This document shows, in pieces, positions 12,600-64,000 of a stretch of 64,000 nucleotides of DNA. The notes beneath the pieces are model-generated. The model ran no database searches. It had not been told where the DNA came from and saw only the letters and a list, made by a program, of their open reading frames with translations. The position numbers and the translations under genes are program-made. This stretch comes from Amphiscolops sp. MND2022 (taxonomy: Eukaryota), in NCBI GenBank assembly GCA_964187785.1, contig OZ076420.1, positions 28,892,001 through 28,956,000 on the forward strand, given 5' to 3'. How positions within the stretch are numbered: position 1 is the stretch's first letter; each line of letters begins with the position of its first letter.

Positions 12600-13100
12600 C
12601 AGAATTATAAAACGATGCAAGGCCATTCTTTGGATACATATACTTGACCCTGTTCACTCCGCAAAAATTGTTTAGATTTTCAGTCGGCATGTTTGAGAAA
12701 TTTGGGCTCAGGGTCAAAACATACCCTATGTACTCGCAAAGTGGTTTATTGGAAATGTTGCTACTACCAGTGTTCTACACTGGAGAATGCCACCATTCCC
12801 AAAATACTAGTGTCACATTCTTATGAATTGATGTAAAGTAGGCTGCAAGCGAATTTATTTTTGTCAAATCATAAACATCTTTCTGGATCACTACTAGACT
12901 ACGTTTTCCGGATTGGCACAGAGAAGTTAATGTCTGCAAACTTTGCAATATTTGTTTCCGTTGAACGAACAGCTGGCAGGTCATTGATATATAAGAGCCT
13001 TGAGGTACGCTGGCGATAAAAAGAAGATTTACGGTAATTCTTTCGTTGTAAAATTCATATTGGCATCTGTCTGTTAATAAGTCACTCAAAACAAGAATCA
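12600..13100 (-). pseudogene. Degenerate non-LTR (LINE, CR1/L2-like) reverse transcriptase fragment
   Basis: Minus-strand remnants DLLTDRCQY, SVPQGS (12996-13012), YINDLP (12975-12991) and KFAD (12932-12941) occur in the order expected for LINE RT GVPQGS...YINDL...FADD. Confidence 0.7.
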
Positions 13101-14723
13101 CTTGTCCACTGAAATGTACTTGTACTTTTCGTTAGGCTATTGGGTGTAGGCGAAAGTCTCCAAAATGTTTGAGTTAAAACGAGTTTATTCTATAGTGACT
13201 TTTGTCGTTTTTTTCTTCAATTTTTTTTACCTTTTGCTTTTGCAATCTTTTCGAAATGACCTTTTTCAAGTCGAAAACCACAGTCTTAGGAATTTTCTAA
13301 GATAGAGCAATTTCTTGGAAAGGGCGAATCCCTTCAAAATTTGAATATTGGACCAAACAATTTGCGGGGCTGTGATCGAAGGATCATTTTTGGGTTTTCA
13401 GTAATGTGAAAATGAAAAAAAAATTATTCAAAAACGAATCCTTAGCTCATCGAAGTACTTTTGCTCTATTAGAGTTCTAGGCGGGGCGTCGACGTACCAT
13501 TCTGTAATAAAATTGATTCGATCTCCTGCAGTAGAAAATGGTTTGAACTGTGAAGGAGACCAAAGTTTTCTGAACGAAAACGTATTTCCTAAAACAGTAA
13601 AACTGAAAATTTAAAAAAATTGAAAGTTGGTTGCAAAAGCGATTGACTGAACAGTCTGAGATCAATGGACAAAAACTTAAAAACTATGCATTTTACCACT
13701 GATTTCGTTTCTATAGAACTGGAAAAACACCAGAAAAAGATCTAAAATCACCCAAAAAAATCACTAGAGTAAGATTCAAACTCACTGGATAACCAGTGTA
13801 AAAGGATTTTCGGACACGATTTGAAACTGCAAACAGGGTTTACAGATACTTCAGAACCGGTCCTTATAATTTTCCCATTTTATTAGGCTTTGATGCATAA
13901 AGGTTGCGAATATCGCCTCAAGGTATTTTGTGTACCAACATTCAGTTGCTAGAAATGTCGAACGAAATTTTCACTTTTCAGCCTTCGGAGTTTTAAAAAG
14001 TTTCGTTATCAACCTTTCAGACGCTCTTTCAACAGATGTGTCCAGTGAGATAATTTTCGTTGCAATATTTTGAAAAGAATTATTTTCCAACAGAAAATTT
14101 CAAGCAAAGAAACTTGAATGCAATGCATCAAGATAGGGCATAAAAAATACTTTTGAACGAAAAAACCTATGAAGAAACGTCTAACTTTGCAAAAAGGTGA
14201 TCCTAGATTAGGATTTAGTAGTGAATACAACTTGTTGAATGTGATATTAGCAAGCCAAAAAAAACTCTTTCTGAAGAGTTTCTTCAAATTTAATGATAAT
14301 TGGTTAATCTTTTTTTGATTACCTTCAAAATAACTCGGGTTTCGATTCATTCGAAATCATTTTTCACAATCAGGGGTTCAATTCATTCATTACAGAAAGA
14401 TATGCCGCTCTTGGTTTGTTTTGCTTCTGTTTTGTTATATTTTGATCTCCAAATGTTTTCTTTTGGACTTGAAATGATTAAAGACTTTGAAAAGTGATGT
14501 TTTCGGAATACATAAAATAGCTGAAGTTCCATTTAAATTCTTGTTTCCGTTGTGGAGATTAATGATTCGTTGGCTGGCCTCAATGTCAAATCCATGCATT
14601 TTCCACCAGTGATCAACAAACCTAACTTGGTGTAGATTTAGTTTTTGTTCACTCAGGCCCTTTTATCTTTGTTAAATTCAAACATGAATCGCAATCTGGG
14701 AGTTTTTCAGGCAATATCTGCTG

Positions 14724-15560
14724 ATGACTTACCCCATTCTGACGTTTGAAAATGTGTGGGCTTTGGCGGGGCCAGTTCTCTCACTATATTTTATTTGGCG
14801 CGTCTACGTGAAAAGCCAATCACCAAACAGAATACAAGGTATATACAGAAGCAGTGACGTATGTGTGTATTACCAAGTTGGTGTTCACTTTATCTGTAAT
14901 GTACTTTTGGCACTGATGCAAATTCCTGGGATCCATGACAATTTGAGTTGCGATGTCCGAAAATGGGTCATAACATGGTGCATAGTGGTTACTGTATTTT
15001 CACATCTTCCTTCTCTGCTGGATTGCTTCATTCGTATCCATGACACACAATTTTACATACTATTTCATTCCCAGAGCCCCTACAACCATCTGTTTATGGC
15101 CGTTTTATGTAGCTGGGTACCTTTGGTTGTTGTAACCTCATTTTCCGTACAATACCCACAAGATGAAAACAACCCAACGATTTGCAACTATGCCCCTTTA
15201 ATTAGTTTTGCGAGTTCGATGGGAAAAGTACTGGTTACAATAGGAGTTTGTTCTTCTCAGGCCTATTCTATCATCATCATCATCGCTAAGTCCAAAAACA
15301 TCCAAAATAGCGTTATCAGGACGTTCAACAAAATTCTCTTAGCCCGATTATTAGTCATATCTATCGTAGTTTTTCCTGCTATTGTCAAGAATAATGTTTT
15401 GACTGCTTGGGCTCCTAAAAAGTGGGATATTATAGAGAGTCGTGCGTCATATTTTTTGGCTACTTATACGATGGGAGATGTAATTGCTTGTTCCCTTTTA
15501 CCCCCCTCAAACCCGTTAGCTGAGAAAATTATGGGAAGAATTAGTAAAATTACAACATGA
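14724..15560 (+). CDS. Intronless divergent class-A-like 7TM receptor (278 aa)
   Basis: Uninterrupted ATG-to-stop ORF with about seven hydrophobic segments. Cys at the start of TM3 (SCDV), DRY-like LLDCFIRI, TM4 Trp (CSWVP), ECL2 Cys (TICNY) and TM7 DVIACSLL. Confidence 0.72.
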   Translation: MTYPILTFENVWALAGPVLSLYFIWRVYVKSQSPNRIQGIYRSSDVCVYYQVGVHFICNVLLALMQIPGIHDNLSCDVRKWVITWCIVVTVFSHLPSLLDCFIRIHDTQFYILFHSQSPYNHLFMAVLCSWVPLVVVTSFSVQYPQDENNPTICNYAPLISFASSMGKVLVTIGVCSSQAYSIIIIIAKSKNIQNSVIRTFNKILLARLLVISIVVFPAIVKNNVLTAWAPKKWDIIESRASYFLATYTMGDVIACSLLPPSNPLAEKIMGRISKITT

Positions 15561-16569
15561 AGATACAATACCACCACTGAATTATTGAACACAACAATCA
15601 AAGACATTCCTTAAAACTGACACTCCTTCGAAAATTTGATGTAACATTTCTTATACAAATATTCCTCTTAGAAAAAAATAACCAATTTGTCCTTTTCAAT
15701 TTTGATCATCTAGAAAAAATTGCTAACGTTGAGGAGCTTTCACAGGGCTAATTAGGTGAATCAATTCAAAAATGACTACCTGTCAGTACAATGCCGGAAA
15801 AACTGCTTCCTGAAACACATAAAAAGTTTCGACAATTAAAATACTTGCTCTGTTTGGGACAATGTGAACTAGCTTGTTTAAAATCTCATCTTTTTCACAG
15901 TTTCCTATACAATCGTTCGACAAGCATGCTAATTTTTCTACATATCAAACAATAGATTCATGTATATTCTTAGAGGAAGCTAGTTACCATTGTAACAAGC
16001 GAGGCAATTAAATTTAAGGCTTTGCAATAGCTTTGCAAAAAGACTTTCAAAAGCAATGCATCAGATGGTATTTGAAAATCTCAATGCAAAAGGTACATGA
16101 AACGAGACTTTTCAGGCTAAAAAAAAAGACTTTTAGCAAATGAAAAGTTAAACGACAAAAAGGGGCAGTTTGGCGAATTTGTAAAGTTGATCAAGTTGAA
16201 CAGTTCCGAGGAAAACTAAAAGTCTCTTGACTTTTTAGTTTACGTCACGTAGAAATGTTTGCAGATAGTGGATGCCTTCTGTATCGTTAGCTGGAGATGG
16301 AAAAATTTGAGGAGCAAATTTGGTCCCTAGAAAGGACTGAAGAAAAGCTGACAATGATCAAAAGTTCTGTTCTGTTTTTGAAATGATATATATAGAAATG
16401 ACGTATACTATAGAAATGACGTTTTTAAAAGATCACGCGAACTGACATCTATGATAATTTTTATGAAGTTCTTTACGTCGTTTCGTTTTACGGCACTTGG
16501 TCCAGTGAGTAGAGTGCGCGAATGGGAAGCAGGGGTGAGTCTTTTCAAATCCTGGAATGGACAAAGTTT

Positions 16570-18395
16570 TTTTTTAGTCGGCGCCTTTTCCTTTAAGGAA
16601 AAAAGCCCGACTATTACAGTGGCTAGTTTTTTTTCTTTTTTTTCGTCAGACCACAGAGCTCATCGCGTATGTACCACTTTTTACAGAAACTGATAAGACT
16701 ACTCAGGCCAAGTCAGGCCAATGGAAACCTAGTGCAAAGGGTCCCCCCTTTCATTTTTTACCTTTTTACGTAATTTACAAACCCGGAAGAGACCAAAGGG
16801 TCGCCCCTTTCAATTTTTTTTCGGCACTGTTCGAAATTTTTTTCGAAAAATTTTTAAAGTCTCAAAAGAGTCCCCCCTTCGAGTTTTTTGATATTTTGCA
16901 ACAGAATGTATGTTAATGAATCCCAAAGGGTCCCCCCTTTTCATTTTTCGGCACTATGCGACATTTTCGAAGTTTTTTTTCAAAAAAAAATTCAAAAAAA
17001 TTTTCAAATTTTGTTTCCAGTCGGGAAACAGTGATTTTCCAGTCATATCGAGCATGAAAGGCACACTTTGGGTGTCTCGAAAGCGTTTTCAAAGCTTTTC
17101 ATGAATACGTCCTGAGCATGTTTAGAAAACTTTGCGCTTCTTGAGCCTTAGATATAGCGCCGACTTTAGACGTTCCCGTCTTGTTATATTTTTCAATCAC
17201 TGGTGGTAAACGAAACCAGAGGATCCCTGACTTCAGGTTTTTGGCACCGTGCGACCTTTTTTTCATGAAACATGTCTTCCAACTTGTGTTTTTAGTCGGC
17301 GCTTTTCTAGTGAAAAGTGCCCGACTATTACATTGACTAGTTTTTTTAGTCGACGCCTTTTCCTTTAAGGAAAAAAAGCCCAACTATTACAGTGGCTAGT
17401 TTTTTTTCTTTTTTTCGTCAGACCACAGAGCTCATCGCGTATGTACCACTTTTTACAGAAACTGATAAGTTCACTCAGGCCAAGTTCGACCAATGCAAAC
17501 TTACTGCAAAGGGTCCTCCCTTTCGTTTTTTACCTTTTTTACGTAACCTACAAAACCGGAAGACTCCAAAGGGTCCCCCCTTTCAATTTTTTTTCGGCAC
17601 TGTTCGAAATTTTTTTCGAAAAATTTTTGAAGTCTCAAAAGAGTCCCCCCTTCGAGTTTTTTGATATTTTGCAACAGAATGTATGTTAATGAATCCCAAA
17701 GGGTCCCCCCTTTTCATTTTTCGGCACTATGCGACATTTTCGAAGTTTTCTTTCAAAAAAAATTCAAAAAAAATTTCAAATTTTGTTTCCAGTCGGGAAA
17801 AGTGATTTTCCAGTCATATCGAACATGAAAGGCACACATTGGGTGTCTCGAAAGTGTTTTCAAAGCTTTTCATGAATACATCCTGGGCATATTTAGAAAA
17901 CTCTGCGCTTTTTGAGCCTTAGATATAGCGCCGACTTTAGACGTTCCCGTCTTGTTCCTTTTTTTTCGTCAGACTACAATCTCACTCTGATTGGGCCACT
18001 TTTCTTACAATCGAAACTACTAAAACTACTACCATAAGGCCAAGTCCGGTCAGCAGAAATTAGTGCAAAAGGGTCCCCCTTTCATTTTTTACTATTTTAA
18101 CGTAACCTACAAAACCGGACGAGACTAAAGGCCCTTTCAATTTTTTTCGGCATTGTGCGACTTTTTTTCGAAAAAATTTTAATGTCTCAAAAGAGTCTTC
18201 CTTTCGAGTTTTTTGATATTTTGCAACAGAATATATGTTGATAAAGCCCAAAGGGTCCCCCTTTTACATTTTTTGGCACTATGCGACAATTTCTGAAAGA
18301 AAAAAATTCAAAAATTTTCGTTTTTTTTTCAAAAAAAGTATTTTGCGCTTTTTGAGCCTTAGATATAGCGCCGACTTTAGACGTTCCCCTCTTGT
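16570..18395 (+). mobile_element. Cluster of three same-orientation Helentron/DINE-1-like non-autonomous elements (about 16570-17184, 17289-17954, 17957-18395)
   Basis: 5' T-run followed by AGTCGGCGC with a local inverted partner (AGTCGGCGCTTTTC-TAGT-GAAAAGTGCCCGACT). 3' subterminal GCGCCGACT, a 5-bp hairpin AGACG-TTCC-CGTCT, and a terminal CTTGT followed by T. The cores 16720-17180 and 17490-17950 are near-identical. Confidence 0.75.
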
Positions 18396-18479
18396 TTGAA
18401 TTTATATTTCGGAAAAAATTGTTTTGTGAGTCTCAAAGATGCTGTTTTGGTGAGATTTGGGCACTGTACGGTTGATAAT

Positions 18480-19060
18480 AAGTTTCACAATAAATGTAAT
18501 TCTGAATAATAAAAAGTCTTTGCTCTCTTTGAGCCTTACGAGTGTGGGATGTAAATGCCACATACCTTTCAAACAATCGAGGTAAATCGGACTAGATGAC
18601 AGAAAGTTGTTTTCTAACGAACTTGTAAGACTGTGCCATCTATGTTTGTTGAGTTGATACCATTGTTGAATAGTGATAGTTGCGAAAAGAGATGATTGTT
18701 ATTGAAGTCTAATTGTGTTTTCAACCGTGGGATCTCGAATCTTTAAGATGAGGCAGTAAGCAAGATCAGTTTTATCCACTATAGAAATCTTTTCCCACCA
18801 GAAACCAACACTAGCCGCAACAAACAACATACAACTACCATATTTAGATGACTCCGGATTTGACGTGAAGAAATTACACACAAGAAAAAATTGACCGAAA
18901 CATGTCGGCACTACGTCGAAAGAATCCACGAAGTCGATATCAAACAAATCATATCGGGTGAAATAGTACCGATGGGTGGAAAATAGACAGAGAAAAAACC
19001 ACTGATAAGACAAGATATTCTTCTGGCTAACCATCTGCGGTCGAAAACAATACAAAAGGT
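18480..19060 (-). pseudogene. Unidentified degenerate coding remnant, homologous to part of the 2.93-kb tandem unit
   Basis: 18530-18745 aligns (~70% by eye) with 26655-26885. Shared translated remnants include GINSTNIDGTV, FTSH and DKTDLAYCL. The family was not recognised. Confidence 0.45.
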
Positions 19061-40079: not shown

Positions 40080-40494
40080 CTGACAGAAGCAGACAGAGAC
40101 AGCACTGACGTAACCTTGAAGATATTGTTGATGTTCTGGAAAGCACTTTCTGTTCTCAGAGAAAACCGGTTGCTAGAACAGATAACGACGTTGAGAACAT
40201 TGTTGAAAATTTGAACGGAAACAGAAGCTGAAACTCTATGAACAAACTCGGATTAAAAACTTTCTAACTTTCAGAAATTTTCATTGCTCGTTTATTCATA
40301 GGAAAGCTATTTCACTCGTTCTACCGTTGGAACATTTTAGTATCGAAGCAATAAAATACCTTGCCCAAAAGGAAGACTATTTCGAAACAACATTTACAAA
40401 TTTTCTATGCAGGGTCTCTGAATCTTTTTCTCTTTTTTCGGAAAATTGATAAAACTTCCATAATTCATTTTCATGGTCAAAAGTTCGGTTTTTG

Positions 40495-41227
40495 TGTAAC
40501 GGAAGCCTGTGGTACAACGAGTTTTCAGAAAAATCGACCAAAAAAACGTTCAAATCCGACGTGGCAAATTGAGCATGTTTTGACCAAAGTACCTGTCAAA
40601 AATCAGTCCAGAAGACGAGGCAAGCCGCCCGCGGACACGACCGAACGGGAACACGGAGTGTAGAAGCCCATGCGCTAAAAAAACTCATGAATAGACTCTC
40701 CGGTTTTTACCGATTTTCAGCATTATGCTACCCAAAGTAGCAAGAACCGGGAAAATGCGTCTTTTCGCTAATTATCCCTTTTTGATGCTTGGAGCCCATG
40801 CGCCCCAGCTTGTAGCTGTGTGGTTGGCCATATTCATGCTTATTTTGATGTGTTTCTACTGTTTTTAGCTAGCCCATGCGCTAGTTTTCGCAGTTTAGAT
40901 CTTAGTACCCATTTTAGACCTTATTCACATGTCACCCTGGAATTTCACCCTGGAATGGAAATTTACACTGTTTATCCTTGGCATTGTTTTTAAAGGCTGT
41001 CTAGACGGTGGTTATGAAGAGAAAAAGCGTAATGCCGTTTATTGTGAGCAGTAACAGACTGGAACAGGCCGGAGAGCGTCCCTAGAGACGGTTCCCCCCT
41101 CCTCGGGACCGGCTTCCGTAGGAGGACAAAATGGGCTGGCGTAATGGTGATTGGTCCCGAATCTTAATACATGGCATCAATTCCTCCACCCTGTGTAGCG
41201 AACAAACGCTAAGCGCTTTTCATTACA
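40495..41227 (+). repeat. 5' LTR (733 bp)
   Basis: TG...CA termini. Direct repeat of 47401-48149. Confidence 0.9.
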
Positions 41228-41243
41228 TAGGAACATCATTTTT

Positions 41244-41263
41244 TGGCGATCACAGAGGGATCG
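41244..41263 (+). promoter_or_regulatory. Candidate primer-binding site complementary to tRNA-Arg 3' end
   Basis: TGGCGATCACAGAGGGATCG resembles the reverse complement of recalled eukaryotic tRNA-Arg(UCG) 3' ends (TGGCGACCACGAAGGGACTCG). It lies 16 nt downstream of the LTR, farther than usual. Confidence 0.55.
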
Positions 41264-44200
41264 TCTTTGGGAAGCTTTCCTTCATGGTTTTATAATTTCC
41301 GACCCTCTGGTGTTTGACGCCAAGAACGATTTGGCTCTGGAAGGAGACGTTTAACCAGAGTTGTTCCATGTTTTTCAGATGATATGATGTTATATTCTGG
41401 TGTTTTTCCAATCTTTCACGGGATTTTTCCGAATACCTGTGGTATGTTCTTGTAAAAGGTATTTGTTGACAGGTATGGTCTAAAATTGCACGTTTCCATC
41501 AGCGGGTACCTTTGTAATGGCTTAGCGAACCACTAGAAAGCCGTTACGCATGTTGTAACAGGTGTTTTACAGCTCATTTCAGCGTTTTTGGCTATGTATG
41601 AGGTATTCAATTGATGGATGCGCCATATTCCATCTGACTGATAGATGAGCTGAAACGAGTGTTCCTCACTCTCCTTTCCCATTTCTGCTACAGACGTCAT
41701 AGAAAGATGGAATTTGGTGGAAAGGTAGAACAAGTGTTGTTGTTGCCCACGACGGTTCAAACCGTTTCTCTCTAGCTGGTCTGGGTGTTGAGAAAAAAGA
41801 CGGCAAAGGTACCATTCCTCATTCCGGAAGAATCAATTTGTTGGAGTATGGTATGAAAAATTTTTTTCGATTGGGTAATTTTTGATGGGGAATCATTTGT
41901 TTATGCTAGTTTTCCCCTGTTGCAACCTAGTGTGTGCTTTTACAACCGTTTTGAGTGAGAAAAGTCCGATTTTGGGTGCAAAAATAGCAAATACGTCAAT
42001 TTTGGCATTTTTGAGTGTTTTTCTTGGTACGAGCCTAGGCGCTCTAGATTTTTATCACAGAAGTTGAAAAAATGGATAGAAAGCAGCTCAAAACCTCTAG
42101 GGTACTGTTACATAATGTAAAGATCACCAAAAAAGCCGTTGGAGTCCTTTTTAGGGACGCATTTTGTATGGAAAACCCGGTTTTTGGTAAAATTGGCAAA
42201 AAACCTCCAACAAATGCTACTGGGAGATGATGCCAGATAGTAATGTAATCGCCTCATCTATGCTGCTATTAGCATACTCCACGGTACCAAAAAGAGGATT
42301 TAGAAAAGTTTGTAACATTTTCTTAGTGATCACAGGTCGGAAAACCTTGATTTTTGGCCAGTTTCAGGAGTGCCATAAGGGATAATTAAAACCTCAAGGG
42401 CATTTAGTGTTTTCGAGTCCTGGGATCCTATGCGCTCTCATTTTCTGTTTTTAAAATAAAAATAACGCATAGTGGTGAAAAGCGCGTGCAAAAACTCCCA
42501 TTCAATGCTGAGAAAAGTGGAAAAACGCACTGAATTTGATCAAGTTTCCACAAAACCGGACTGTCCAAGTGTTAGTGTTGGGTCATAAATCCCCGAACCC
42601 TAGCCAAAAAGTGGTTGCATTTTCGCAATCACCACTGAAATAAACGCTCGCACCGAAAATTTGGTGGACCTTGCAATTTTCTAAAACTGCAGGACCGACA
42701 CGGCTTGTGGCAGTACTGTGACTAGTGGGGAACGAGTTAACCCCACTGACACTGCCGTAACATTTGTAGCGTTGACCCTCTTAGCCGATTTGTGAAAAAA
42801 GCGTCAAAAAAGACCGTTTTTTTCTAAGATCGTGTCCACGCCTAGCCCAAGTTCCCGGTAAACTCGAGAGCTTCCATTGAGCTGTGATACCAGCATTGTG
42901 GGTGCCCACTGGGAGCGTGTATCAAGTTCCGTGCCGATCGGTGCAGTATTCGTTGAGAAATTGACGGAAACGTACTGCACAAAAACGGGTGCAAAAAGGT
43001 TAATTTTTCAATATTTTTTGGAAGTGCCCGAACACCTTAGCCGAAGGGTGAGGACAAATCGTTGCTCACTAACATAACTGATACTAGTTAGTGCATTGCT
43101 AGCAAAGAAACCAGACCGCTGACTGCAACCAGTGCTCAGAAATTGTGTGATTAGAGTGCATTTTGACCCCTACTGATACACAGGAGTACCGCACATCTGT
43201 ACCCAGAGAAAAGTGTGTACAGGTCACGGAACCCAAATCGGCGTTCACTATTGTGTACCTACGTAACTTTAAGGTCACTTGGTCAATTTTGAGCCAGATC
43301 CGACTGCTGAGTGACGAATCCGAGCAACTTGTGTTTTTTTTGTACTCTCCGAGAAAGTTCAAAATTTGTTGTAAACGTCGCGTGCTTGTCTCAGAGAACG
43401 TGTTACTCAGAACCAAACTCATTTTCTGGACCTGTGGGTTGGTATCAATTGCGTGAGTGTGTTTGAACTCGCTCCGATCCATAGAAGAGATTTCGACTAT
43501 TTTCAGACGTGCATATCGTGATTCTGGTTTAAGATTTCACCGAGACGAAAATTGGGAAAGTGGGGTTAAACCCAGCCATACGTGTTAGAAACCCGAAGAA
43601 AACCCCCTTGTCAGAACTCTTGGTCGTGAATTCATTGCTATACGTGCGATTCGTGGTCAGCATTGACTGTGCTGCTTTGCTGGGACATAGCATTTTGTTA
43701 CTTACAGTCGCGATATCCTGTGTATTGTAACGAATTGGACCATTTTTGGGAGTTATCGGCGCACCTCATCGGAAAGTTGGGACCACATTGCTCTGGACCA
43801 TTGTTGTCAGTGTCCTTTGGTGCACCGTTGCTGAAAAGGTGAGCTCGAGAGCTCAGCATTCTGGACGAGAGTCATTGATTGCACACTGAAAAATCGTATC
43901 AGTTGAGACACGTCGATACGGAAAGCCTGTACCCTGTCTGAAACTGATCCAATAGTCTGAGACCCCATCGGTGCTTACTGCAGTGCACCTGGTTATACGA
44001 GGGACCACGTGGCTATTTTTTGAGCCCGATCCTACGTTTCCACTCTTAGCACGAGCCGCTTGAGTAATTTTCAAAAAAGTTGAAAATTTCAAAAAATTGG
44101 TTAAAAAGCCTCTAGCTTGTATCTGGAAGTATTTATCAGCTTTGTCAGGTCATTTTTCCAATTTGTGTGACTGAACAAACACGCTGGCAGTTTTCACCCA

Positions 44201-45069
44201 GTACACTTGATAGAACTGAGTTTGACTGTGCTCAGAGTCACGTTTGGGCCAAAATCCCGAAAAACCGTCGGAAAAACGAAAACATAAAAGCTTAGTACTC
44301 CCTCTGTACGGAAGGCAGAGACCAAAAGCCTTCATTTTCAACCAAGGGGACCTGGTAGGTTTTCCTGGGTGCAAACGAGGCAAATCCCAAGACTCAAAAA
44401 CATTGACGGCAGGGGTCATAAATTTGACTCAACTGAAACTTTGAAATTTGGTTCTGATAAAGTCTCAATCGGAGGTTTTAATTGATTGCGACGCACTTCC
44501 GACTGACTTTTTTCATCGAGAACGTCTCAACAAGGCGTTACGCCGTGAGCCCAAACAGGGGTTTGAATTTCCTGAAACTACCCTGAGGGATCCAACTTAA
44601 CCAAAATCACGAGATTTTGAGAGGAATCACCTCCTAGAGACAAATATTTAACCAAGTTGCCCAAGTGTGAACCCTTTTTGACCACTCTGGTGCCCTAATT
44701 CGGAGTTTTTCGGCTATGCCAGGTAAAAAAAACACCGATTAACAGGTCACTTCTGCAGAGAACACTTTTGGGTGATTGCAACACACCCAAATTGCTTGAG
44801 GTTGAGAGGTCAATAGACAGCTCGACTGTTTGTTTCGTGTACACTATCCGACACGACAGCATCATTGTGCTCGAACGCACAATTTCTCAGCCTTCGAACT
44901 CATCTTGACTGTGACCCTGAGACTAATTTTGGGTCAAAAAGAGTTCTAGTCAGGCAGTTTGAACTTATCTGAAGCTGGAATGAAATTGTGGAAGGTCATA
45001 GACAGCTTCTGTTCCTTTTTCAAGGGGTAAGAGGGTGTCAGTGCAGCACTACCAATCGCTGAACCTGTT

Positions 45070-46299
45070 TTGAAAACAGAATGTGAATCTCAAATGGTAG
45101 ATGAACATGACCGATCGACGAAGTTAGAGGATCTGAACTTGGAAGATTGGCCTTTGGAGGATAGTTTCAAACTTGTCTCCGATTTTCTAGTTTCAATGCC
45201 ATTTAACTCTCAGGATACCGAGCCGGAGATGAGCATAAAGACTTCCAGTCCTAGTTCAGTATCGTCGTCGAAAGGATTCTCTCTCCATGAAACCAGTATT
45301 CAGATTTATCAGAAACAGGACCAACGGTTAGAGGCCCTGGAGCAGCAGATGGATGATTTATCAATCTTGTTGACACAAAGCGATCTACGCAGAGAGAAAT
45401 TGCTAGCTCGAGCGCAAGCGCAATTGCAGTCGATAAGTGTAGCAGTACACTTCGAAAGTGCTACTATCAATATTCCAAACGACTCCGAAGGAGAACCAAT
45501 GACACCGTCTACAAAAGATATGGGGGTAGACCCAATGTTTTTAGACACGACAACCATGGGCATTGCTGATACGTTACCCATTTATCATCTTGCTGATTAT
45601 GGATTGCTCGAGGGCAATCCCTGCACAACAGATTAAGAAGATGAACTGATAACAACCTTTCCCTCCACTTCATCATTGAAGGGGGAGAGGGTACCCTCAA
45701 CTCCAAATTCTTGCTCTGCAACAAATTGCGGAACGCGGAATCTATCTGCCAATGCCGTGTTGGAACCTGAAACAGCACCAACACCAAACCTTTTTGAAAA
45801 CCACATATCGACAAGTCCAATAAATTCGGTTTGCAACTCTCACTTTCCTGGAACAAAGTCCCCATTATCAATTTCGAAGTTGCTGCTGGATTTGTTGAAA
45901 GAATCTATTGTGCCACATTCTGCCAAACATGGTCTGCAGAATATTATTTTGGCAAACCCACCAATCTTCGTCAGAGGCTTGCCTGGTGGTTCAGCTAAAA
46001 CCCGACCAGCTGGACACAGACGTGGTCGACCACCGCGCACTTCCGGTGAACACTCATTGCAAACAGTGCTCCTATCTTTTTATGACGGACGTCGTCATGG
46101 TCGTCCACCACGCTCGGCTGCGGAAAACCTTCTACTGTCATGGTCACACCAACCGAAGGGACATAGGCGTGGCCGCCCGCCGAATAACTATCCAAGATTG
46201 TGTTCAAGACCCAATTTATCGTTCTGCATTTTGGGTATTGGGCATTTTTTTTGTCTAATTCCTGCTATCCTCTTATCAAGGAGGGTGCTCAACGATTAA
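45070..46299 (+). pseudogene. Element-encoded coiled-coil + 3x AT-hook-like protein, one internal stop
   Basis: ORFs 45070-45636 and 45676-46299 are in the same frame, separated only by TAA at 45634-45636. Heptad region QKQDQRLEALEQQMDDLSILL. Motifs HRRGRPPR, RRHGRPPR and HRRGRPPN. The frame continues upstream past a TAA at 45028. Confidence 0.8.
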
Positions 46300-47400
46300 A
46301 ACCCGGGGAGTCAACTAAGGCCCGGGGAGCCTCAGTGGAGGATAACAACACACCTATACTCCACAATTATGCTGGACAATTCCCAGAGAATATCACAACG
46401 TTTGGTAATGGACACCTTGCAACGTGATGTTCTTTTTCGAGTAGTTATTTCTGCAACTTTACTTCGTAACTTTAGTAGTCATGTGAACGTACGTCGCGAC
46501 ATTTTTGTTTCAAGTTTTATTTGAGAAGTTTGAGTTCAAATACTTCTGTTAATTCAATGAGTAACCCAGAAACTCTAAAAACTCAACATGTATTGTTTCG
46601 CCCAAAAGGTGCTATTTTTGTTTGTGCATAAAAATTTTCCCAAGGTTTTCAGTTTTTCCTCCAAGTTTCAACGTGACACTCAAAGGTTGTGGAGCTCGCG
46701 CGCTCCAAATATCTTAATTGCTGGATTTTGTCTACTCTGGCCTACTTCATTCCAGTGCTTACACTCGCGAGCAGTACGTAGTTTGCTTACACGCAGCTTA
46801 ACCGATGCTACTGAACTCTTTTAGATATGGAGCTTCACATGAGTGCGTGTTGCACGAACCAAGCCAAACTGTGAAGAAAAAGTATCGAAAAAGCTTGTTT
46901 TCTTTTTAAACAGTGGTTTTTCTGCTGAAAGGAGGTTTTACCGAGAACATCTTTTAACTTTCTGGAAACTGGATTTTTACTGCCGTGGAAAAGAAGTTTT
47001 CCATGAGAACCACGTGCGTTTTGGAGCCTGAGGGCTCCGACAAAAAAATTTTAGACGTCCAAACAACCATTGTGCTAGAAAGATCCTATTCAAATTTGAT
47101 GCAAAAAAACTTGTGCTAACAAATTGGTGCTTTTTTTGGATTTGATCAATTTTAAGGTGCATTTTTGAGTACTTTTTTCTAACTCGAGGGCTAGCTCTGT
47201 TTCAACAGTTTGTGGACGATGCAGGTTCCTGGATTGCAAGAAGCAAGACCTCAAGGTGACCTAATCAGTGAAAAATGACAGTGCCACTAGACCCTTGCAA
47301 AAAAACATCAGTTTGAACTCCCAGTGGAATGCAATGATGTGGAGATGTTTCCAGCTTCTCCACATGACAGGGACGTCATGCCTAAGACCCGGGGAGTGGA

Positions 47401-48149
47401 TGTAACGGAAGCCTGTGGTACAACGAGTTTTCAGAAAAATCGACCAAAAATTCGTTCAAATCTGACGTGGCAAATTGAGCATGTTTTGGCCAAAGTACCT
47501 GTCAAAAATCAGTTCAGAAGACGAAGCAAGCCGCCCGCTTACACGACCGAACGGGAACACGGAGTTTAGAAGCCCATGCGCTAAAAAAACTCATAAATAG
47601 ACTCTTTTTGAGGTGCTAACTCCGGTTTTTACCGATTTTAAGCATTATGCTACCCAAAGTAGCAAGAACCGGGAAAATGCGTCTTTTCGCCTAATTATCC
47701 TTTTTTGGTGCTTGGAGCCCATGCGCCCCAGCTTGTAGCTGTGTGGTTGGACATATTCGTGCTTATTTTGATGTGTTTCTACTGTTTTTAGCTAGCCCAT
47801 GTGCTAGTTTTCGCAGTTTAGATTTTAGTACCCATTTTAGACCTTATTCACATGTCACCCTGGACTTTCACCCTGGAATGGAAATTTACACTGTTTATCC
47901 TTGGCATTGTTTTTAAAGGCTGTCTAGACGGTGGTTATGAAGAGAAAAAGCATAATGCCCGTTATTCTCAGCAGTAACAGACTGGAACAGGCCGGAGAGC
48001 GTCCCTAGAGACGGTTCCCCCTCCTCGGGACCGGCTTCCTTAGGAGGACAAAATGGGCTGGCGTTATGGTGATTGGTCCCGAATCTTAATCCATGGCATC
48101 AATTCCTCCACCCTGTGTAGCGAACAAACGCTAAGCGCTTTTCATTACA
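47401..48149 (+). repeat. 3' LTR (749 bp) preceded by polypurine tract
   Basis: GGGGAGTGGA|TGTAAC...CATTACA. Carries ~16 bp extra relative to the 5' LTR. Confidence 0.9.
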
Positions 48150-48572
48150 TTGTTTCTGTTCCAGCCTATTCACGTTTTGGTGATTTTTCTCCCAGAAAAG
48201 AGTTAACAACGGTGAAAACACTGAGTAATCCAAGTAATTCATTTGTGATCACCATGTTTTCCATCACATCCCCACCGGTAGCAATGACACATTTTCATTT
48301 TGCGATGGCTATGGGTGGACCACCGGTGGGCTAGTAACGCAAACAATGCAAAAACATTGAGGCGAATCTGTAGTCCATTTGTTCAACATTCTAAAAGTTT
48401 ACCCATCAATCATCTGCGATTGACATTTGTTTGTTTTGACTAAGATCTATTTGCTTTACAACAATGCCTACCGATGGCCATCGGTAGAAAAAGTATCGAA
48501 AGTGGCAGATGGTTTTCCACCGATAGCCATTAATGGTTCATAGATGGACATTTATAAAATTGCCCTGGAATG

Positions 48573-50300: not shown

Positions 50301-51062
50301 TTAATTTTCTCGGTACTGTGCGACTTGTTTCGAAACGTTTTTTGTGACTAGGCCTGCATTGCGCTCTATCGACGTTTCCAAAGATGTGAAAATGCCCCAT
50401 ATCAAAAAGTCATCCTTATAGATGATGTCGCGATTTTGTTCGCTGTTGACAGAGTCTGTTGAACTCTCTCTAGATCTCAGTCTATTGCTTTCCTGTGTGA
50501 AACACGTTTTGGGACGGTTTTCCCACGTTTTCTGTGAATTTCCTACTTCGGCGTTCCGTTGTAGCCCACTGCTGGACCTTCGGTCCTTTATGGTGAAATC
50601 GGTCGACCTTGGGCTAGGATGTAGCCCGTTAGACCCTCGGTCTACCATGGTGAGATTAGGTCTCCCCTGCATTTCTAGTGTATTTTGGATAGAAGGAAGC
50701 ACTGTACTTGTGATTGCGGCTGTGATCGCTTCCTGAATTTGGGAATTCAAACTAGTTTTGATTACTTCGTAACGAAGTTTCGAAATTACTTCGTTTATCA
50801 ACCCAGTGGTCTCAATCGTGATTTCACTGTTTTCTCTGCTATTGGTATTAAGTAAAGACCTGAAATCTTCTTCTATAACGTTTGAACTTTGTTGTGGTCT
50901 ACTAGACCCTGAGTCTAAATTCACTTCGTTTTCGCTAATATTATTCTCTCCATCATCTCTAGAGTAACTTCCAAGCATTATGTCAACGTTTTCTACATCG
51001 GACAGCATGTCTAACTGCCAAGACCGTCTCTCTTTAGCCTTTTGCTTTCTTGTTGAAGGCAT
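50301..51062 (-). CDS. gag-like N-terminal ORF starting inside the solo LTR and reading through into flanking DNA
   Basis: ATG at 51062 (MPSTRKQKAKERR...). About 212 codons are open to the LTR end (...SEQNRD at 50426), then ~41 codons of flank to a stop at 50301. Includes a helical LNSQIQEAITAAITSTVLPSIQNTL segment. Assignment to gag is inference. Confidence 0.6.
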   Translation of the reverse strand: MPSTRKQKAKERRSWQLDMLSDVENVDIMLGSYSRDDGENNISENEVNLDSGSSRPQQSSNVIEEDFRSLLNTNSRENSEITIETTGLINEVISKLRYEVIKTSLNSQIQEAITAAITSTVLPSIQNTLEMQGRPNLTMVDRGSNGLHPSPRSTDFTIKDRRSSSGLQRNAEVGNSQKTWENRPKTCFTQESNRLRSRESSTDSVNSEQNRDIIYKDDFLIWGIFTSLETSIERNAGLVTKNVSKQVAQYREN

Positions 51063-52108
51063 TGAAGAAAATAGGCACAACAACAATGAATTAACAAATC
51101 GAACTATGTGTGTATAAGGTCAACAAATGAAAATGTACAAATTGTACTGAAGGCAAGGTTGTGATCACACAAATGAAGCAGTTCGAGTTGAGGTGTATCT
51201 TTGAGTAGAGTTTTCCAAAAAGGTCCCCCCGGTCTCCTGGGCCTTGCTATATATACCCTGATCTGCATGACAAGCAACTTTACAGGCATCATGTTACTAA
51301 AAATAGCGACTGGGTGTATTCAGAGAACATGACGTCACGATTACATCACTGAGTATTATGGTAAATATAGCATCAAACGCAAGAGCGGTTCAAAGAGAGA
51401 GGGGGGATAATTTGACCTTCAGGTCTAACTAAGTTTAGCTATGATATAAGTAGATATTAATGGTTACATGTGTTAACTTAAAGATTACATGTCATCTAAA
51501 TATTATGATGTACAGTCAATCAACTAATAACTTCATAATTAAACTTAAAGTCCAATTAACTACATAACACTAAGTATAATACCTTGTTGAATAAATACAA
51601 CCAAAGTGGACCTTAGGTCCGCACAGCTACAGCGACATGTGATTGATTTGCCGGAGTGGCAATAAATAGTACCATAGCAGACTTTTGGTCCGCGCGGCTA
51701 CAGTAATTNNNNNNNNNNNNNNNNNNNNNNNNNNNNNNNNNNNNNNNNNNNNNNNNNNNNNNNNNNNNNNNNNNNNNNNNNNNNNNNNNNNNNNNNNNNN
51801 NNNNNNNNNNNNNNNNNNNNNNNNNNNNNNNNNNNNNNNNNNNNNNNNNNNNNNNNNNNNNNNNNNNNNNNNNNNNNNNNNNNNNNNNNNNNNNNNNNNN
51901 NNNNNNNNTACTAATATTGTGGCCATGTGGACTACAAGTCCTTAATGGAAAATTATAAAATAAGCACAATAGAATGAGAACCGATTGTAGTTTCAAAGTA
52001 CCTTAGGTACTAGTCTTCAAATAGGGAGTACTCCGGGTAGGGGGTTTGCTAGTGAATTCTCTTGGGGAATTTGGTAGCAATTCCCGTCGCAGGCGGCAGC
52101 CTGCGACA
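50426..52108 (-). mobile_element. Long solo LTR (~1.68 kb including the N gap) with perfect 5-bp TSD
   Basis: Minus strand starts TGTCGCAGG and ends CGCGACA (6-bp terminal IR TGTCGC/GCGACA). GATGA flanks both sides (50421-50425 and 52109-52113). Hairpin GTCGCAGG-CGGCAG-CCTGCGAC lies at the 5' end. Confidence 0.85.
51709..51908. other. Assembly gap (200 N)
   Basis: Run of N. It is flanked by related short subrepeats ending in CTACA (51616-51631, 51687-51702, 51921-51936). Confidence 1.
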
Positions 52109-52717
52109 GATGACTTCAGCACAGAGCGATTACATAGGTAAAGCTTCACTTACCTAAAAGGTATTAACCCCAAAGGATCATACCTTTGATTTTCATAGTT
52201 CTTGTAAGAAATTAGTCATTTTATGACCGACGAAAAGTCTTCCTCTGGGTTTTCAGCATTTAGGGTTTTTAAAAGGCGTTTTCTGGCACTAGGCGTTTTC
52301 AAGGTGGGAGGTTGAGCCTATTTAGTGTTAAAGGTCTGTAATTTTCAAAGATGGATATCATCAGTCCCGTTTTGTGAAATGAGTTTTTTCTGATGACAAA
52401 TTTTCTATAACCAAATTGATGACATCATATCAGAGTTTCTTTCGAAGACAGAATCGATTTGTTTTAGGTTTTTCCAGAACACGTAAAGAGTTCGAATCTA
52501 ACCATCATCGAAATTTTGCAACTTTTCAATAAAAATTATTAAATTACCGCTCACAGGTTGTTCAAAACGATGAAAAACGTGCTAAATGTTCCGTCTGTTT
52601 TGTAAACATTTTCGAGGTTGAATGATGTCCTGTTTTTTGAATAGGCGCGCTAGTAGATATCGCAAAAAATATTGCAGTCTCATTGGGCGTATAGATTTTT
52701 TCCGGACATATTGGAAT

Positions 52718-60961: not shown

Positions 60962-63900
60962 TGTAACGGCAAGCAGTTATCGGTCGCTTAACACGTCAAC
61001 AGAGGTGGAGGAACCTGCAGGAATGGGTGATTCGCTCGGGACAGGCGCCCATCGCCACAGATCCATTTTGCCTCCAGGGGTGAAATACGTCCCGGGGCCG
61101 CGGGTGCTTCGACGAATACTGTCCAACCGGTCCTAGTCTTTGATTGCTAATAGTAACGGGCATCTTTCTGACTCTCTAAAGACCACCGCTTAACTAGCAT
61201 ATAAAAACAATGCCAAGAATAAGGTAAATTTCCAGTTCCAGGGTGACATGTGAATAAGATCTAAAATTGGGGAATAAGATCTAAACTAGCGCTAACGCTA
61301 CTGAATACAGCCAAAATCACTGAAAATACATGAAAACAGGCACGAATATGGCAAACCACACAGCTAAAAAGCTGGGGCGCAGGGGCTCCAAGCACCAAAC
61401 AAGGACAATTAGGCGAAAAGACTCATTTTTACGGTTTCCGCTACATAAGGTAGCATAATGCTGAAAATCGATAAAACCGGTGTTAGCACCTCAAAAAGAG
61501 TCTATTTTCGGATGTTCTTGCCGTCTCTGGCTTCTGTCATGGCGGCGCGCCCGTGTTTTTGCTCGTTCTTGCTCTTTGTTGTCGAAGTACCTGCCAATTT
61601 CGTGGAAACAGCGAAAAGAGCAATCACATGCTCAGTGCCACGTCACACATCGGATTAGAATTTTTGACAAAATTTCTCAACATGTCAAAGTTGCAAAATC
61701 GGTTGATATTGCTGTACCAGAGCTTGCCGTTACATCACTCCCCGGGCTTTATGCATGACGTCCCTGTCATGCGGAGAAGCTGGCATTGAATACATCGCCA
61801 CATCATGAGTGCAATCCACGGGGGTCTCAAACTGGTGATGTTGCAACGGTCCAGTGGCACTGTCATCTTTTGCTGATTGGGCAACCATGAGGTCTTGCTT
61901 CTTGCCATCCAGAGAACCTGCATCGTCCACAAACTGTTGAAACAGAGCTACCTCGAGAGCTAGAAAACCAGTACTCAAAAATGCACCTTGAAATTGATCA
62001 AATCCAAAATTCCATATATCAATCAAAAAAGCACCAGTTTTTTAGCACGAGTTTTCAGTTTTCTGCAAAAGTCTGAATAGGATACTGCTAGCACTTTGGT
62101 TTTTGGACGTCTAAAATTTCTTTTACGGAGCGCTCACGCTCCAAAGCGCACGTGGTTCTCAGCAAAACATCTTTTCCACGGCAATTAAATTTCAGTATGA
62201 AGCACAGTTAAAAGTTCTTTTCGCTAAAACTTCTTTTCAGCAGTAAAACCACTGTTTAAAAGGAAGACAAGCTGTTTCTTTGATACTTTTTTTACAGTTC
62301 GGCTTGGTTTGGGCAACACGCACTGATGTGCAGCTCCATACCTGTATAGAGTTCAGTAGCATCTGTCAAGGAGCGCATCAGAAGCAAACTACGAACTGCT
62401 CGTAAGAGTAAGCACTGGAGTAAAGCAGACAAAGGTAGATCAAATCCTGCCATTTGCAGATCAGGAGCGCGCGCGCTACTTATTTTTCCGGATATCACGT
62501 TGGAATCTGGAGGAAACTTTTGGAAATCTTGGAAAAGAAAAACAAAAATAGCACCTTTCGGGCGTAGCAATACATGTAGAGTTTTTGGGTTATTTATTGA
62601 ATTAACAGAAGTATTTGATTTCAAACATCTCAAATAAAACTAGAACAAAAATGTCGCGACGTACGTTTACATGACTACTAAAATTACGAAACAAAGTTGC
62701 AGAAGAAACTGCTCCAACAAGAACATCACGCTGCAAGGTATCCATTACTAAACGTAGTGATATCCTCCAGGCGTTATCCAATTGAGTTGATGAGTGTAGG
62801 GGTGTTTGTCTTCAACTGAGGCTCCCCGGGCCTTAGTTGACTCCCCGGGCCTTAGTTGTTGAGCACCCTCTTTCACATGATGATAGTGAGGAATGGACAA
62901 AATTGAATGCCTGACATAAAAATGCAGCAGGACAAATTAAGCGTTGACGACACCTCCTCCCCCTTTGAAAAGAAGTGGAGTGTGGTTTGGACTGGATAGA
63001 CATCACCATCCAATAGCAGCATGACGTGCAACAAGCATGAAGCATCAGGAAATCCGATAGAGAAAACTGTGGAGACTGGGTCTGTCTCAAGACTGGAATA
63101 GTTGTTCGGAGGACGGCCACGCCTATGTCCCTTCGGTCGAAGCGACCATGGTAAAGCTGGGCGTGGTGGACGGCCACGGCGACGTCCATCATAAAGGGAC
63201 AACAGAACTTTTTGCCATGAGTGCTCAAAGTCTGTGCGCGGTGGTCGACCACGTCTATGACCAGTTGGTCGAGTTTTAGCTGAACCACCAGGCAACCAAT
63301 TGATGAAGACTGGCGGGTCCACCTGAATAAAATCCTGTAGCCCACGTTTAGCAGAATGTGGCTCCAAGGAGTCTTTCAGCAAATTCGGTAGCAACTTCGT
63401 AGTTGATATTAGGGACTTTGTTCCAGGGAAGTGAGAGTTGCTTACAGAATCTTGCGATAAGGAAGTGGAGGGTGAGATTGATATTCGTTCATTCTTCGTA
63501 TCACTTGAGTAGAGGTTGCGCTCGCGCAACCCATTATCACCGGCGTGATATTCAGGCAAAGTGTCAGTAATACCTATAGTTGTAGTGTCCAAAGATATTG
63601 GGTCCACCCCCATGTCTTTTGTTAGCGGTGTCAATGGTTCTGATTTGACGTCGTTTGAAACATTGATCTCGGCATTTCTGAGGTGTGCCTGCACTTCTGC
63701 ATTTATCGACTGCATTTGTGCTAGCACTCGTGCTAACAATTTCTCCATACGTATCTCACTTTGTACCAACGAGATTGATATTTCACCCATCTGTTGCTCC
63801 AGGGCCTCTAATTGTTGATCCTGTTTCTGATAAAACTGAATACTGGCTTCATGGAGAGAAGATCTTTTAGACGACGATACTAAACTAGGACTGGGAGTCC

Positions 63901-64000
63901 TTATGCTCCTCTCCGGCTCGGTATCCTGAGAGTTAGATGGCATTGAGTCTAGAAAATTGGAGACAGGTTTGAAACTATCCTCCAAAGGCCAATCTTTCAA
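60962..64000 (-). mobile_element. Second, divergent member of the AT-hook LTR family (3' part; runs off the window)
   Basis: 3' LTR 61734-60962 (773 bp, TGTAACGGCAAGC...GCTTGCCGTTACA) preceded by CCCGGGGAGTGA. The 3' UTR and ORF are colinear with 45150-48149. Confidence 0.9.
62873..64000 (-). CDS. Intact (at least 375 aa) coiled-coil + 3x AT-hook-like ORF of the LTR element
   Basis: Stop-free to the window edge. DWPLEDSFK, QKQDQQLEALEQQM, TKDMGVDP, NSHFPGTKS, LPGGSAKTRP, HRRGRPP, RRRGRPP and HRRGRPPNNY are shared with 45070-46299. Confidence 0.82.
   Translation of the reverse strand: MKDWPLEDSFKPVSNFLDSMPSNSQDTEPERSIRTPSPSLVSSSKRSSLHEASIQFYQKQDQQLEALEQQMGEISISLVQSEIRMEKLLARVLAQMQSINAEVQAHLRNAEINVSNDVKSEPLTPLTKDMGVDPISLDTTTIGITDTLPEYHAGDNGLRERNLYSSDTKNERISISPSTSLSQDSVSNSHFPGTKSLISTTKLLPNLLKDSLEPHSAKRGLQDFIQVDPPVFINWLPGGSAKTRPTGHRRGRPPRTDFEHSWQKVLLSLYDGRRRGRPPRPALPWSLRPKGHRRGRPPNNYSSLETDPVSTVFSIGFPDASCLLHVMLLLDGDVYPVQTTLHFFSKGEEVSSTLNLSCCIFMSGIQFCPFLTIIM

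What the first reader, a model, noticed from the sequence alone, without database searches (positions are those of the whole stretch)
40495..48149. LTR retroelement without gag/pol that carries a single coiled-coil + triple AT-hook ORF
Seen: paired TG..CA LTRs, a PPT, a PBS-like site, and a 6.2-kb interior with no RT, RNase H, integrase, protease or CCHC motif. The only long frame (about 45070-46299) has a heptad-repeat segment and three RRGRPP-like motifs. Established: RGRP cores flanked by basic residues define AT-hook minor-groove binders, and non-autonomous LTR elements such as plant LARDs or zebrafish Bhikhari (one orphan ORF) are mobilised in trans. Inference: this is a non-autonomous lineage that kept or acquired a chromatin-binding, oligomerising accessory protein. 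The protein might tether the element or a helper integrase to AT-rich DNA, act as an anti-silencing factor, or be an unrecognisably diverged Gag.
Basis: partly seen in the sequence, partly recalled or inferred. Interest (0 to 1): 0.82.

Follow-up and report, generated by a model that had tools for sequence, protein, structure and literature searches.

The report
Stripped-down Gypsy retrotransposon with chimeric gene
This is an old, broken copy of an abundant parasitic retrotransposon that lost gag-pol, is most likely copied by giant Gypsy elements of the same genome, and carries one selected gene whose front part is shared with those helpers and whose tail has three AT-hook-like motifs.

Summary
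The LTRs are 40495-41227 and 47401-48149, 94% alike. The "375-aa ORF" is broken here by two in-frame TAA stops.

The element has no gag-pol, but it is not an independent lineage. It belongs to a family with over 1000 candidate copies that shares its cis parts with giant Ty3/Gypsy elements holding intact 2771-3064-aa gag-pol frames:
- LTR (98% identity)
- an 18-nt tRNA primer site
- a multi-kb leader (93-98%)
- the 3' UTR (91-97%)
- a 3-bp target duplication, seen in 14 of 14 family copies and in one complete related autonomous element

The N-terminal two thirds of the ORF recur at 85-93% identity as an N-terminal extension of Gag-Pol in the ~3050-aa helper variants. The tail with three RGRPPR motifs occurs only in the stripped elements.

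The ORF is under moderate purifying selection (dN/dS 0.40-0.53 between subfamilies). It is predicted disordered apart from one long helix, and it has no relatives outside the family.

Its role is inferred, not shown: probably an adaptor joining helper particles to nucleic acid or chromatin. Expression could not be tested.

The scan reached a similar reading before on other DNA (s1-183086).

The parts
40492..40494 (.). Left copy of the 3-bp target-site duplication (TTG)
   Evidence: The same 3 bases follow the 3' LTR at 48150-48152. A 3-bp duplication was found in 14 of 14 family copies.
40495..41227 (+). 5' LTR (TGTAA...TTACA)
   Evidence: It is 94.1% identical to the 3' LTR. The genome search gave 4133 first-look LTR candidates.
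41244..41262 (+). Primer-binding site, mutated at one base in this copy (TGGCGATCAC...)
   Evidence: The family form is conserved in all subfamilies and in the autonomous element L067. It is the complement of the 3' end of a tRNA-like gene motif present 368 times in the genome.
41263..44979 (+). Long non-coding leader, shared with the helper elements
   Evidence: Colinear in all copies at 85-91%. The young-subfamily leader is 93.6% identical to helper locus L065 and 98% identical to genomic copies that lie upstream of Gag. No Pfam or helper-protein match.
44980..46299 (+). The family ORF, broken here by TAA at 45028-45030 and TAA at 45634-45636; terminal stop at 46297-46299
   Evidence: The frame is open (395-470 aa) in many other copies. 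dN/dS is 0.40-0.53 between subfamilies.
45094..45924 (+). N-module: acidic motif, Ser-rich stretch, long helix (about 45280-45483) and a middle region up to ...VPHSA
   Evidence: Homologous to residues 1-258 of P0125, which is fused to Gag in helper locus L065. Found at 85-93% identity inside intact 3048-3064-aa helper frames. Helix, at low confidence.
46012..46191 (+). Three RGRPPR (AT-hook-like) motifs at 46012-46041, 46087-46116 and 46159-46191
   Evidence: Invariant or near-invariant columns in an alignment of 18 proteins. Pfam AT_hook scores only 9.5 bits against a cut-off of 17.4. In 150 scored genomic copies the tail lies only in frames of 505 aa or less.
46213..46278 (+). Hydrophobic C-terminal tail, variable between subfamilies
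   Evidence: Its end corresponds to helper sequence just after the pol stop.
46300..47387 (+). 3' untranslated region, shared with helper elements
   Evidence: Window element 6083-6592 matches L065 19210-19710 at 76%. The young subfamily matches helper L066 at 96.7% through to the LTR.
47388..47400 (+). Polypurine tract
   Evidence: CCCGGGGAGTGGA lies directly before the 3' LTR in all copies, and a near-identical tract occurs in helpers L066 and L067.
47401..48149 (+). 3' LTR
48150..48152 (.). Right copy of the 3-bp target-site duplication (TTG)

Best explanation
The stretch is one old, dead copy of a very abundant non-autonomous LTR retrotransposon family. The family descends from giant Ty3/Gypsy elements of the same genome and is most likely copied by them.

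It keeps the cis signals an element needs to be reverse-transcribed and integrated by the helper's enzymes. These are the LTR ends, an 18-nt tRNA primer site, the polypurine tract, a multi-kb leader and the 3' UTR. It leaves the same unusual 3-bp target duplication.

Gag-pol is replaced by one 400-470-aa gene that begins in the helper's gag-start context:
- Its first two thirds (acidic motif, serine-rich stretch, long helix) form a module that many helper copies carry in frame ahead of Gag.
- Its last third, with three RGRPPR motifs and a hydrophobic end, is private to the stripped elements. The helper's integrase extension carries the same motif type.

The gene has been kept by purifying selection while subfamilies diverged.

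Inferred, not shown: the protein is a helper-compatible adaptor. The shared module would let it join helper Gag-Pol assemblies. The basic motifs would bind the element's own RNA or cDNA, or AT-rich chromatin, giving the parasite better access to packaging or integration.

My odds: about 0.9 for identity and helper relation, about 0.75 for a selected function, and about 0.35 for the adaptor mechanism.
For: Family:
- Six full copies are colinear over the whole interior at 85-91%.
- Young copies have LTRs 99.1-99.7% alike and no other long frame.
- There are 1740 ORF candidates and 4133 LTR candidates in the genome.

Helper:
- P0125 fuses the N-module to Gag. It is followed by PR, RT-RNase H and IN in locus L065.
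- L065 matches young element L010 at 93.6% over the LTR, the leader and about 210 ORF codons.
- Helper L066 shares the 3' UTR and LTR at 96.7-98.5%.
- 17 of the 40 best leader hits have a Gag hit 1.5-7.3 kb downstream on the same strand.
- Intact gag-pol frames are 2771-3064 aa, and the N-module lies inside the 3048-3064-aa ones.
- Complete autonomous element L067 has the same primer site, spacer and polypurine tract, and a 3-bp duplication.
- The 3-bp duplication holds in 14 of 14 stripped copies.

Selection:
- dN/dS is 0.40-0.53 in the true frame against 0.62-1.42 in shifted frames.
- The motif columns are invariant.
- 142 of 150 tails carry no stop.

No gag-pol remnant was found.
Against: - No expression data exist. 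The only public runs are DNA.
- The structure model is poor (pLDDT 34).
- The complex test gave no verdict.
- Within the young subfamily dN/dS is 0.7-0.96, close to neutral.
- The motifs miss Pfam's AT_hook cut-off.
- Flanks of 14 insertions are only slightly AT-richer than background (66% against 60%, untested for significance).
- The origin of the motif-bearing tail is not traced. Only a 9-15-aa motif-level match to the helper's integrase tail was seen.
- Helper sequences came from an ENA assembly, not from the window's own assembly, although P0125 is 100% identical to a place in this genome.
- Only one autonomous element could be checked for the duplication length.
Confidence: 0.6

Rival explanations
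1. The ORF is a functionless leftover of the deletion or recombination that made the element. It looks open only because most copies are young.
For: - dN/dS within the young subfamily is 0.7-0.96.
- The protein is predicted disordered.
- No family, fold or outside relative was found.
- The window copy itself is broken.
Against: - Between subfamilies with dS 0.34-0.86, the true frame has dN/dS 0.40-0.53 and the shifted frames do not.
- The same architecture persists in all subfamilies down to 45-50% identity.
- The three motifs are invariant.
Confidence: 0.15
2. The gene is the parasite's own invention, and the helper took the N-module from it. The ~3050-aa helper variants would then have arisen by recombination with a stripped element. 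On this reading the ORF is not derived from Gag, apart from its start.
For: - In a tree of N-modules the one helper sequence nests deep inside the young stripped clade (support 100/99). Older stripped lineages branch outside it.
- Helper L066 (2771-aa type) and L067 lack the module.
- In L065 the module sits upstream of a second, diverged copy of the gag-start peptide.
Against: - Only one helper N-module sequence could be read.
- The root is a midpoint root.
- Older module-bearing helpers may exist but be decayed or unsampled.
- L065 itself may be a recent recombinant (93.6% to L010).
Confidence: 0.4
3. The protein acts on chromatin for the element's benefit, independently of helper particles. 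It could be an anti-silencing factor or an integration tether, analogous to host LEDGF/p75.
For: - RGRP cores flanked by basic residues are present.
- The helper's integrase extension carries the same motif type, where targeting domains usually sit.
- One copy lies inside a 178-bp satellite array.
Against: - The motifs are below the AT_hook threshold.
- Insertion flanks are only weakly AT-enriched.
- This reading gives no reason why the module shared with Gag-Pol is conserved.
Confidence: 0.2
4. The ORF is a captured host gene fragment.
For: Non-autonomous elements sometimes carry host fragments (general knowledge).
Against: - A profile search of 1.84 billion representative proteins found 194 hits. 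All 150 listed are 529 aa or shorter, and all are pieces of this family.
- The word search found only unnamed family members.
- The N-module belongs to the helper lineage.
Confidence: 0.03

Closest known systems
LARDs and their partners (such as rice Dasheng with RIRE2), from my own knowledge
   Same: Large LTR elements without gag-pol that share the LTR, primer site and polypurine tract with an autonomous Gypsy partner and outnumber it.
   Different: LARDs are defined as non-coding. This family keeps a selected 400-470-aa gene and occurs in what earlier notes call an animal genome (not tested here).
TR-GAG elements and BARE-2-type chimeras of plants (category named in PMC13570524 and PMC8704663)
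   Same: Non-autonomous LTR elements that keep part of the helper's first ORF and depend on the helper for the enzymes.
   Different: TR-GAG elements keep a recognisable Gag capsid domain. Here only the start and an N-terminal extension are shared. No capsid or zinc knuckle is present, and a new motif-bearing tail was added.
Zebrafish Bhikhari
   Same: An animal LTR element with one orphan ORF and no pol.
   Different: No sequence relation was found. Here the helper and the origin of most of the ORF are identified.
LEDGF/p75 and chromodomain-bearing chromovirus integrases (functional analogy only; review PMC5053271 turned up but was not opened)
   Same: A module that contacts the integration machinery combined with basic, AT-hook-type motifs that contact chromatin. 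The helper's integrase tail carries such motifs where chromoviruses carry a chromodomain.
   Different: No homology. The function here is untested. The protein is encoded by the parasite element, not by the host or the integrase.

Membership tests
LTR retrotransposon (structure) | Paired direct LTRs ending TG...CA | tested here: met
   40495-41227 and 47401-48149, 94.1% alike.
LTR retrotransposon (structure) | Target-site duplication flanking the LTRs | tested here: met
   TTG on both sides here. The duplication is 3 bp in 14 of 14 copies. As far as I recall the usual length is 4-6 bp.
LTR retrotransposon (structure) | Primer-binding site complementary to a tRNA 3' end, and a polypurine tract | tested here: met
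   An 18-nt complement of a T-arm/acceptor motif found 368 times in the genome. Calling that tRNA tRNA-Arg rests on memory only. The purine tract lies before the 3' LTR.
Non-autonomous LTR element with an autonomous partner | No PR, RT, RNase H or IN in the interior | tested here: met
   Pfam on the longest frames of an old and a young copy, and tblastn with seven helper proteins.
Non-autonomous LTR element with an autonomous partner | Shares LTR, primer site, polypurine tract or leader with an element that encodes pol | tested here: met
   L065, L066 and L067, plus co-location of leader and Gag hits in the genome.
LARD (strict sense) | Interior without coding capacity | tested here: not met
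   A conserved ORF under purifying selection.
TR-GAG / Gag protein | Recognisable Gag capsid domain or zinc knuckle | tested here: not met
   No Pfam family matches the ORF. No CCHC motif. The model is disordered. Only about 70 N-terminal residues align weakly to the helper's Gag start.
Ty3/Gypsy (Metaviridae) lineage, via the helper | Domain order PR, RT, RNase H, IN with an H2C2 zinc finger | tested here: met
   L065 ORFs. Precomputed domains of L067 and of P0268-P0269.
AT-hook proteins | Match to the AT_hook profile (R-G-R-P core with basic flanks) | tested here: inconclusive
   RGRP cores occur three times and are conserved. PF02178 scores 8.4-9.5 bits against a cut-off of 17.4. A proline follows the core.
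AT-hook proteins | Binding to the minor groove of AT-rich DNA | not testable with these tools
   This needs a binding assay.

The most novel reading that the evidence does not exclude
The stripped element evolved its own adaptor gene, and the giant helper later captured that gene's N-module in front of Gag. That would be gene flow from parasite to helper. In addition, this Gypsy lineage integrates with a 3-bp duplication and places RGRPPR motifs both in the integrase tail and in the parasite's protein, as a shared targeting or packaging device.
Probability: 0.3. Interest if true: 0.65.

Novelty: new variant of a known kind. Interest (0 to 1): 0.45.

Why it matters
Non-autonomous LTR elements are usually thought of as non-coding riders. 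This family is abundant and recently active, and it has kept a gene under selection while swapping a protein module with its helper.

If the protein aids packaging or integration, it would be a clear case of a parasite-of-a-parasite evolving its own tool. The pair would then be a tractable system for studying competition between helper and rider.

The consistent 3-bp duplication also suggests an integrase geometry outside the usual 4-6 bp range. That usual range is from my memory, not from a paper read here.

For genome annotation, the ORF should be masked as transposon-derived, not called as a host gene.

Tried and rejected
- **Pfam.** The ORF and 20 interior frames gave nothing meaningful.
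- **ESM Atlas.** No usable hit.
- **AlphaFold2.** With 18 sequences the pLDDT was 34, so no fold search was run.
- **Complex prediction.** The helix region was tested against the helper's module. The verdict was "no answer", which is evidence neither way.
- **Sequencing runs.** No RNA run is on record, and the four runs laid are DNA contigs. Expression and splicing are therefore untested.
- **The most abundant Gypsy as helper.** This element has a 1610-aa pol and 3-kb LTRs. It was rejected because it shows no similarity, a different primer site and a 5-bp duplication.
- **Macro-domain search.** Run to find the "giant Gypsy" of earlier notes, it gave only 3 host-like hits.
- **Look-up of a 77-aa frame inside the LTR.** All 10 places shown were stripped elements.
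- **tRNA scan of 30 loci.** None found.
- **Two tRNA patterns.** One was mis-specified by a base and the other over-constrained, and both found nothing. The corrected pattern worked.
- **Tail against the helper's integrase extension.** No significant alignment.
- **Literature.** Searches for AT-hook LTR elements and for 3-bp duplications in LTR elements found nothing relevant.
- **Further DNA from this genome.** Helper sequences therefore come from ENA assembly ERZ25074608.
- **One call failed.** One search used wrong frame coordinates.
Full report
**What is at the coordinates**

Two direct repeats lie at 40495-41227 and 47401-48149.
- They are 94.1% alike, with 26 mismatches and 3 gaps.
- They begin TGTAA and end TTACA.
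- They are flanked by TTG on both sides.
- A purine tract lies directly before the 3' LTR.
- Sixteen bases after the 5' LTR lies a 19-nt block at 41244-41262.

That block is conserved in every copy of every subfamily. Its family form is the exact complement of 15 nt of TTCGAATCCCTCTGTGGTCG plus an added CCA. This is a T-loop plus acceptor motif. With up to one mismatch allowed it occurs 368 times in this genome, mostly in one tandem array. It is therefore an 18-nt tRNA primer site. Calling the tRNA tRNA-Arg rests only on my memory of human tRNA-Arg sequences.

The long frame is not intact here:
- TAA at 45634-45636 splits it into pieces of 201 and 220 codons.
- TAA at 45028-45030 cuts off the upstream start codon that other copies use.

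**It is a large family**

The window is C12:28892001-28956000 of a 1.07-Gb eukaryotic assembly.
- The LTR has 4133 first-look candidates.
- The ORF has 1740 candidates.
- Six full copies are colinear with the window element over the whole interior at 85-91%.
- A younger subfamily has elements of about 8.5-8.8 kb whose LTRs are 99.1-99.7% alike. Its only long frame is the same ORF, at 455-470 codons.
- One such copy runs off the window's end at 61119-64000 on the minus strand.
- All 14 copies whose two junctions I could read have a 3-bp target duplication with no shared sequence.

**No decayed gag-pol**

- Pfam found nothing real in the 10 longest frames of the window copy or in 10 frames of a young copy.
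- tblastn with seven proteins of two helper elements hits only the ORF.

**The ORF**

An alignment of 18 family proteins shows these parts in order:
- a conserved acidic motif
- a serine-rich stretch
- a helix-forming segment
- a middle region
- three near-invariant RGRPPR motifs
- a variable hydrophobic end

Other properties of the ORF:
- AlphaFold2 gives pLDDT 34, with one long helix at residues 61-121.
- The motifs reach only 8.4-9.5 bits on Pfam AT_hook against a cut-off of 17.4. I therefore call them AT-hook-like.
- Between subfamilies dN/dS is 0.40-0.53 in the true frame and 0.62-1.42 in the shifted frames. Within the young subfamily it is 0.7-0.96.
- A word search found 346 unnamed proteins of about 400 aa at 45-90% identity.
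- A profile search of 1.84 billion representatives found 194 hits. All 150 listed are family pieces of 529 aa or less.
- The ESM Atlas gave nothing.

**The helper**

One of those hits, P0125, joins the first 258 residues of the ORF to a Gag-like sequence. Its locus L065 continues with protease, RT-RNase H and integrase. The integrase carries an extension of about 950 aa that holds an RGRPRGRPPR motif.

Similarity between helper and stripped elements:
- L065 matches young stripped element L010 at 93.6% over the LTR, the 4.6-kb leader and about 210 ORF codons. It matches again at 91% in the 3' UTR.
- A second helper copy, L066, lacks the N-module. It shares the 3' UTR and LTR with L010 at 96.7-98.5%.

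In the window's own genome:
- The Gag part has 4452 candidates, and 143 were scored at 92-100% identity.
- Many of these lie in intact frames of 2771-2773 or 3048-3064 aa.
- The N-module lies at 85-93% identity inside the 3048-3064-aa frames, just upstream of Gag.
- Seventeen of the 40 best leader matches (98% identity) have a Gag match 1.5-7.3 kb downstream on the same strand. Others have the motif-bearing tail instead.

A complete 19-kb relative, L067, has LTRs 99.6% alike. It has the same U5 end, spacer, primer site and polypurine tract, RGRPPR motifs in its pol, and a 3-bp duplication.

The genome's most abundant other Gypsy has a different primer site and a 5-bp duplication. It is not the helper.

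**Anatomy of the gene**

- The first roughly 70 residues of the open frame align weakly (32%, E 5e-4) with the helper's Gag start.
- The N-module is shared with the ~3050-aa helper variants.
- The tail with three motifs lies only in frames of 505 aa or less in all 150 scored copies, and 142 of them have no stop.
- The tail has no significant match in the helper beyond its last roughly 30 codons, which correspond to sequence just after the pol stop. There is also a 9-15-aa motif-level match to the integrase tail.
- In a tree of N-modules the single helper sequence nests inside the young stripped clade. This hints that helpers took the module from the parasite. That rests on one helper sequence and a midpoint root, so it is not settled.

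**Mechanism**

Shown:
- the cis signals are shared with the helper
- the duplication length is the same
- the protein module is shared
- the gene is under selection

Inferred: the protein is an adaptor that joins helper assemblies through the shared module and binds nucleic acid or chromatin through the basic motifs.

Not shown:
- Expression could not be tested, because only DNA runs exist.
- Binding is untested. The complex test gave no verdict.
- A targeting preference is not established. Insertion flanks are 66% AT against 60% background in 14 sites.

**Comparison and verdict**

This is a non-autonomous derivative of a Ty3/Gypsy family.
- It is close in kind to LARDs and TR-GAG elements.
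- It fails the strict LARD definition because it codes for a protein.
- It fails the TR-GAG definition because it has no capsid domain.

I file it as a new variant of a known kind.

An earlier follow-up of this scan (s1-183086) reached a similar reading on other DNA. I tested and extended it here.

Noticed in passing
window 61119-64000 (minus strand), running off the window end: The 3' part of a young-subfamily copy of the same family: ORF, 3' UTR and 3' LTR, 77-80% identical to the studied element. Its ORF lies in an open 458-codon frame according to the genome search.
   Followed up: partly
G000:C9:57537654-57568193 (outside the window): A tandem array of more than 300 copies of a tRNA 3'-end motif, spaced mostly at 172-174 bp or multiples of that. 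It is the likely source of the primer tRNA for this retrotransposon lineage. The unit could not be fetched or folded.
   Followed up: no
L009:1-3440 and 12223-18931: A 178-bp satellite array (about 56 units, 97-100% alike) with a stripped family element inserted into it.
   Followed up: no
L046-L051 (G000 C3:67.10 Mb, C4:56.73 Mb, C2:22.86 Mb): A different, very abundant and young 13.9-kb Gypsy family. It has 3-kb LTRs that are 99-99.97% alike, a 471-codon gag frame with a CCHC knuckle, a 1610-codon pol frame, a 5-bp duplication and its own primer site. The integrase profile search gave 27377 first-look candidates genome-wide.
   Followed up: partly
window 45899-46255 (+); L010:7671-8201 (+): A second frame overlapping the motif-bearing tail is open in every copy examined (119-201 codons). 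Some database proteins switch into it after a frameshift. Its dN/dS of 0.62-0.94 gives no clear sign of selection.
   Followed up: partly
G000, many places listed: A class of copies carries the same motif-bearing tail in shorter open frames of 327-377 codons. This suggests a further stripped variant with a truncated N-module.
   Followed up: no
L067:16751-21118 (+) and L065:14706-18941 (+): The giant helper lineage carries a 1455-aa third ORF without any Pfam family, and an integrase extension of about 950 aa. Earlier notes call parts of these macrodomain and SGNH. I did not test that.
   Followed up: no
L011:84-803 (minus strand), next to a withheld N stretch: A 240-codon open frame outside the element. 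By eye it resembles a DNA-packaging ATPase of a large DNA transposon or virus. It was not searched, and the masked stretch was left alone.
   Followed up: no
window 51709-51908: A run of 200 N, either an assembly gap or masked, inside the region another note calls a solo LTR (50301-52113). It was not examined.
   Followed up: no
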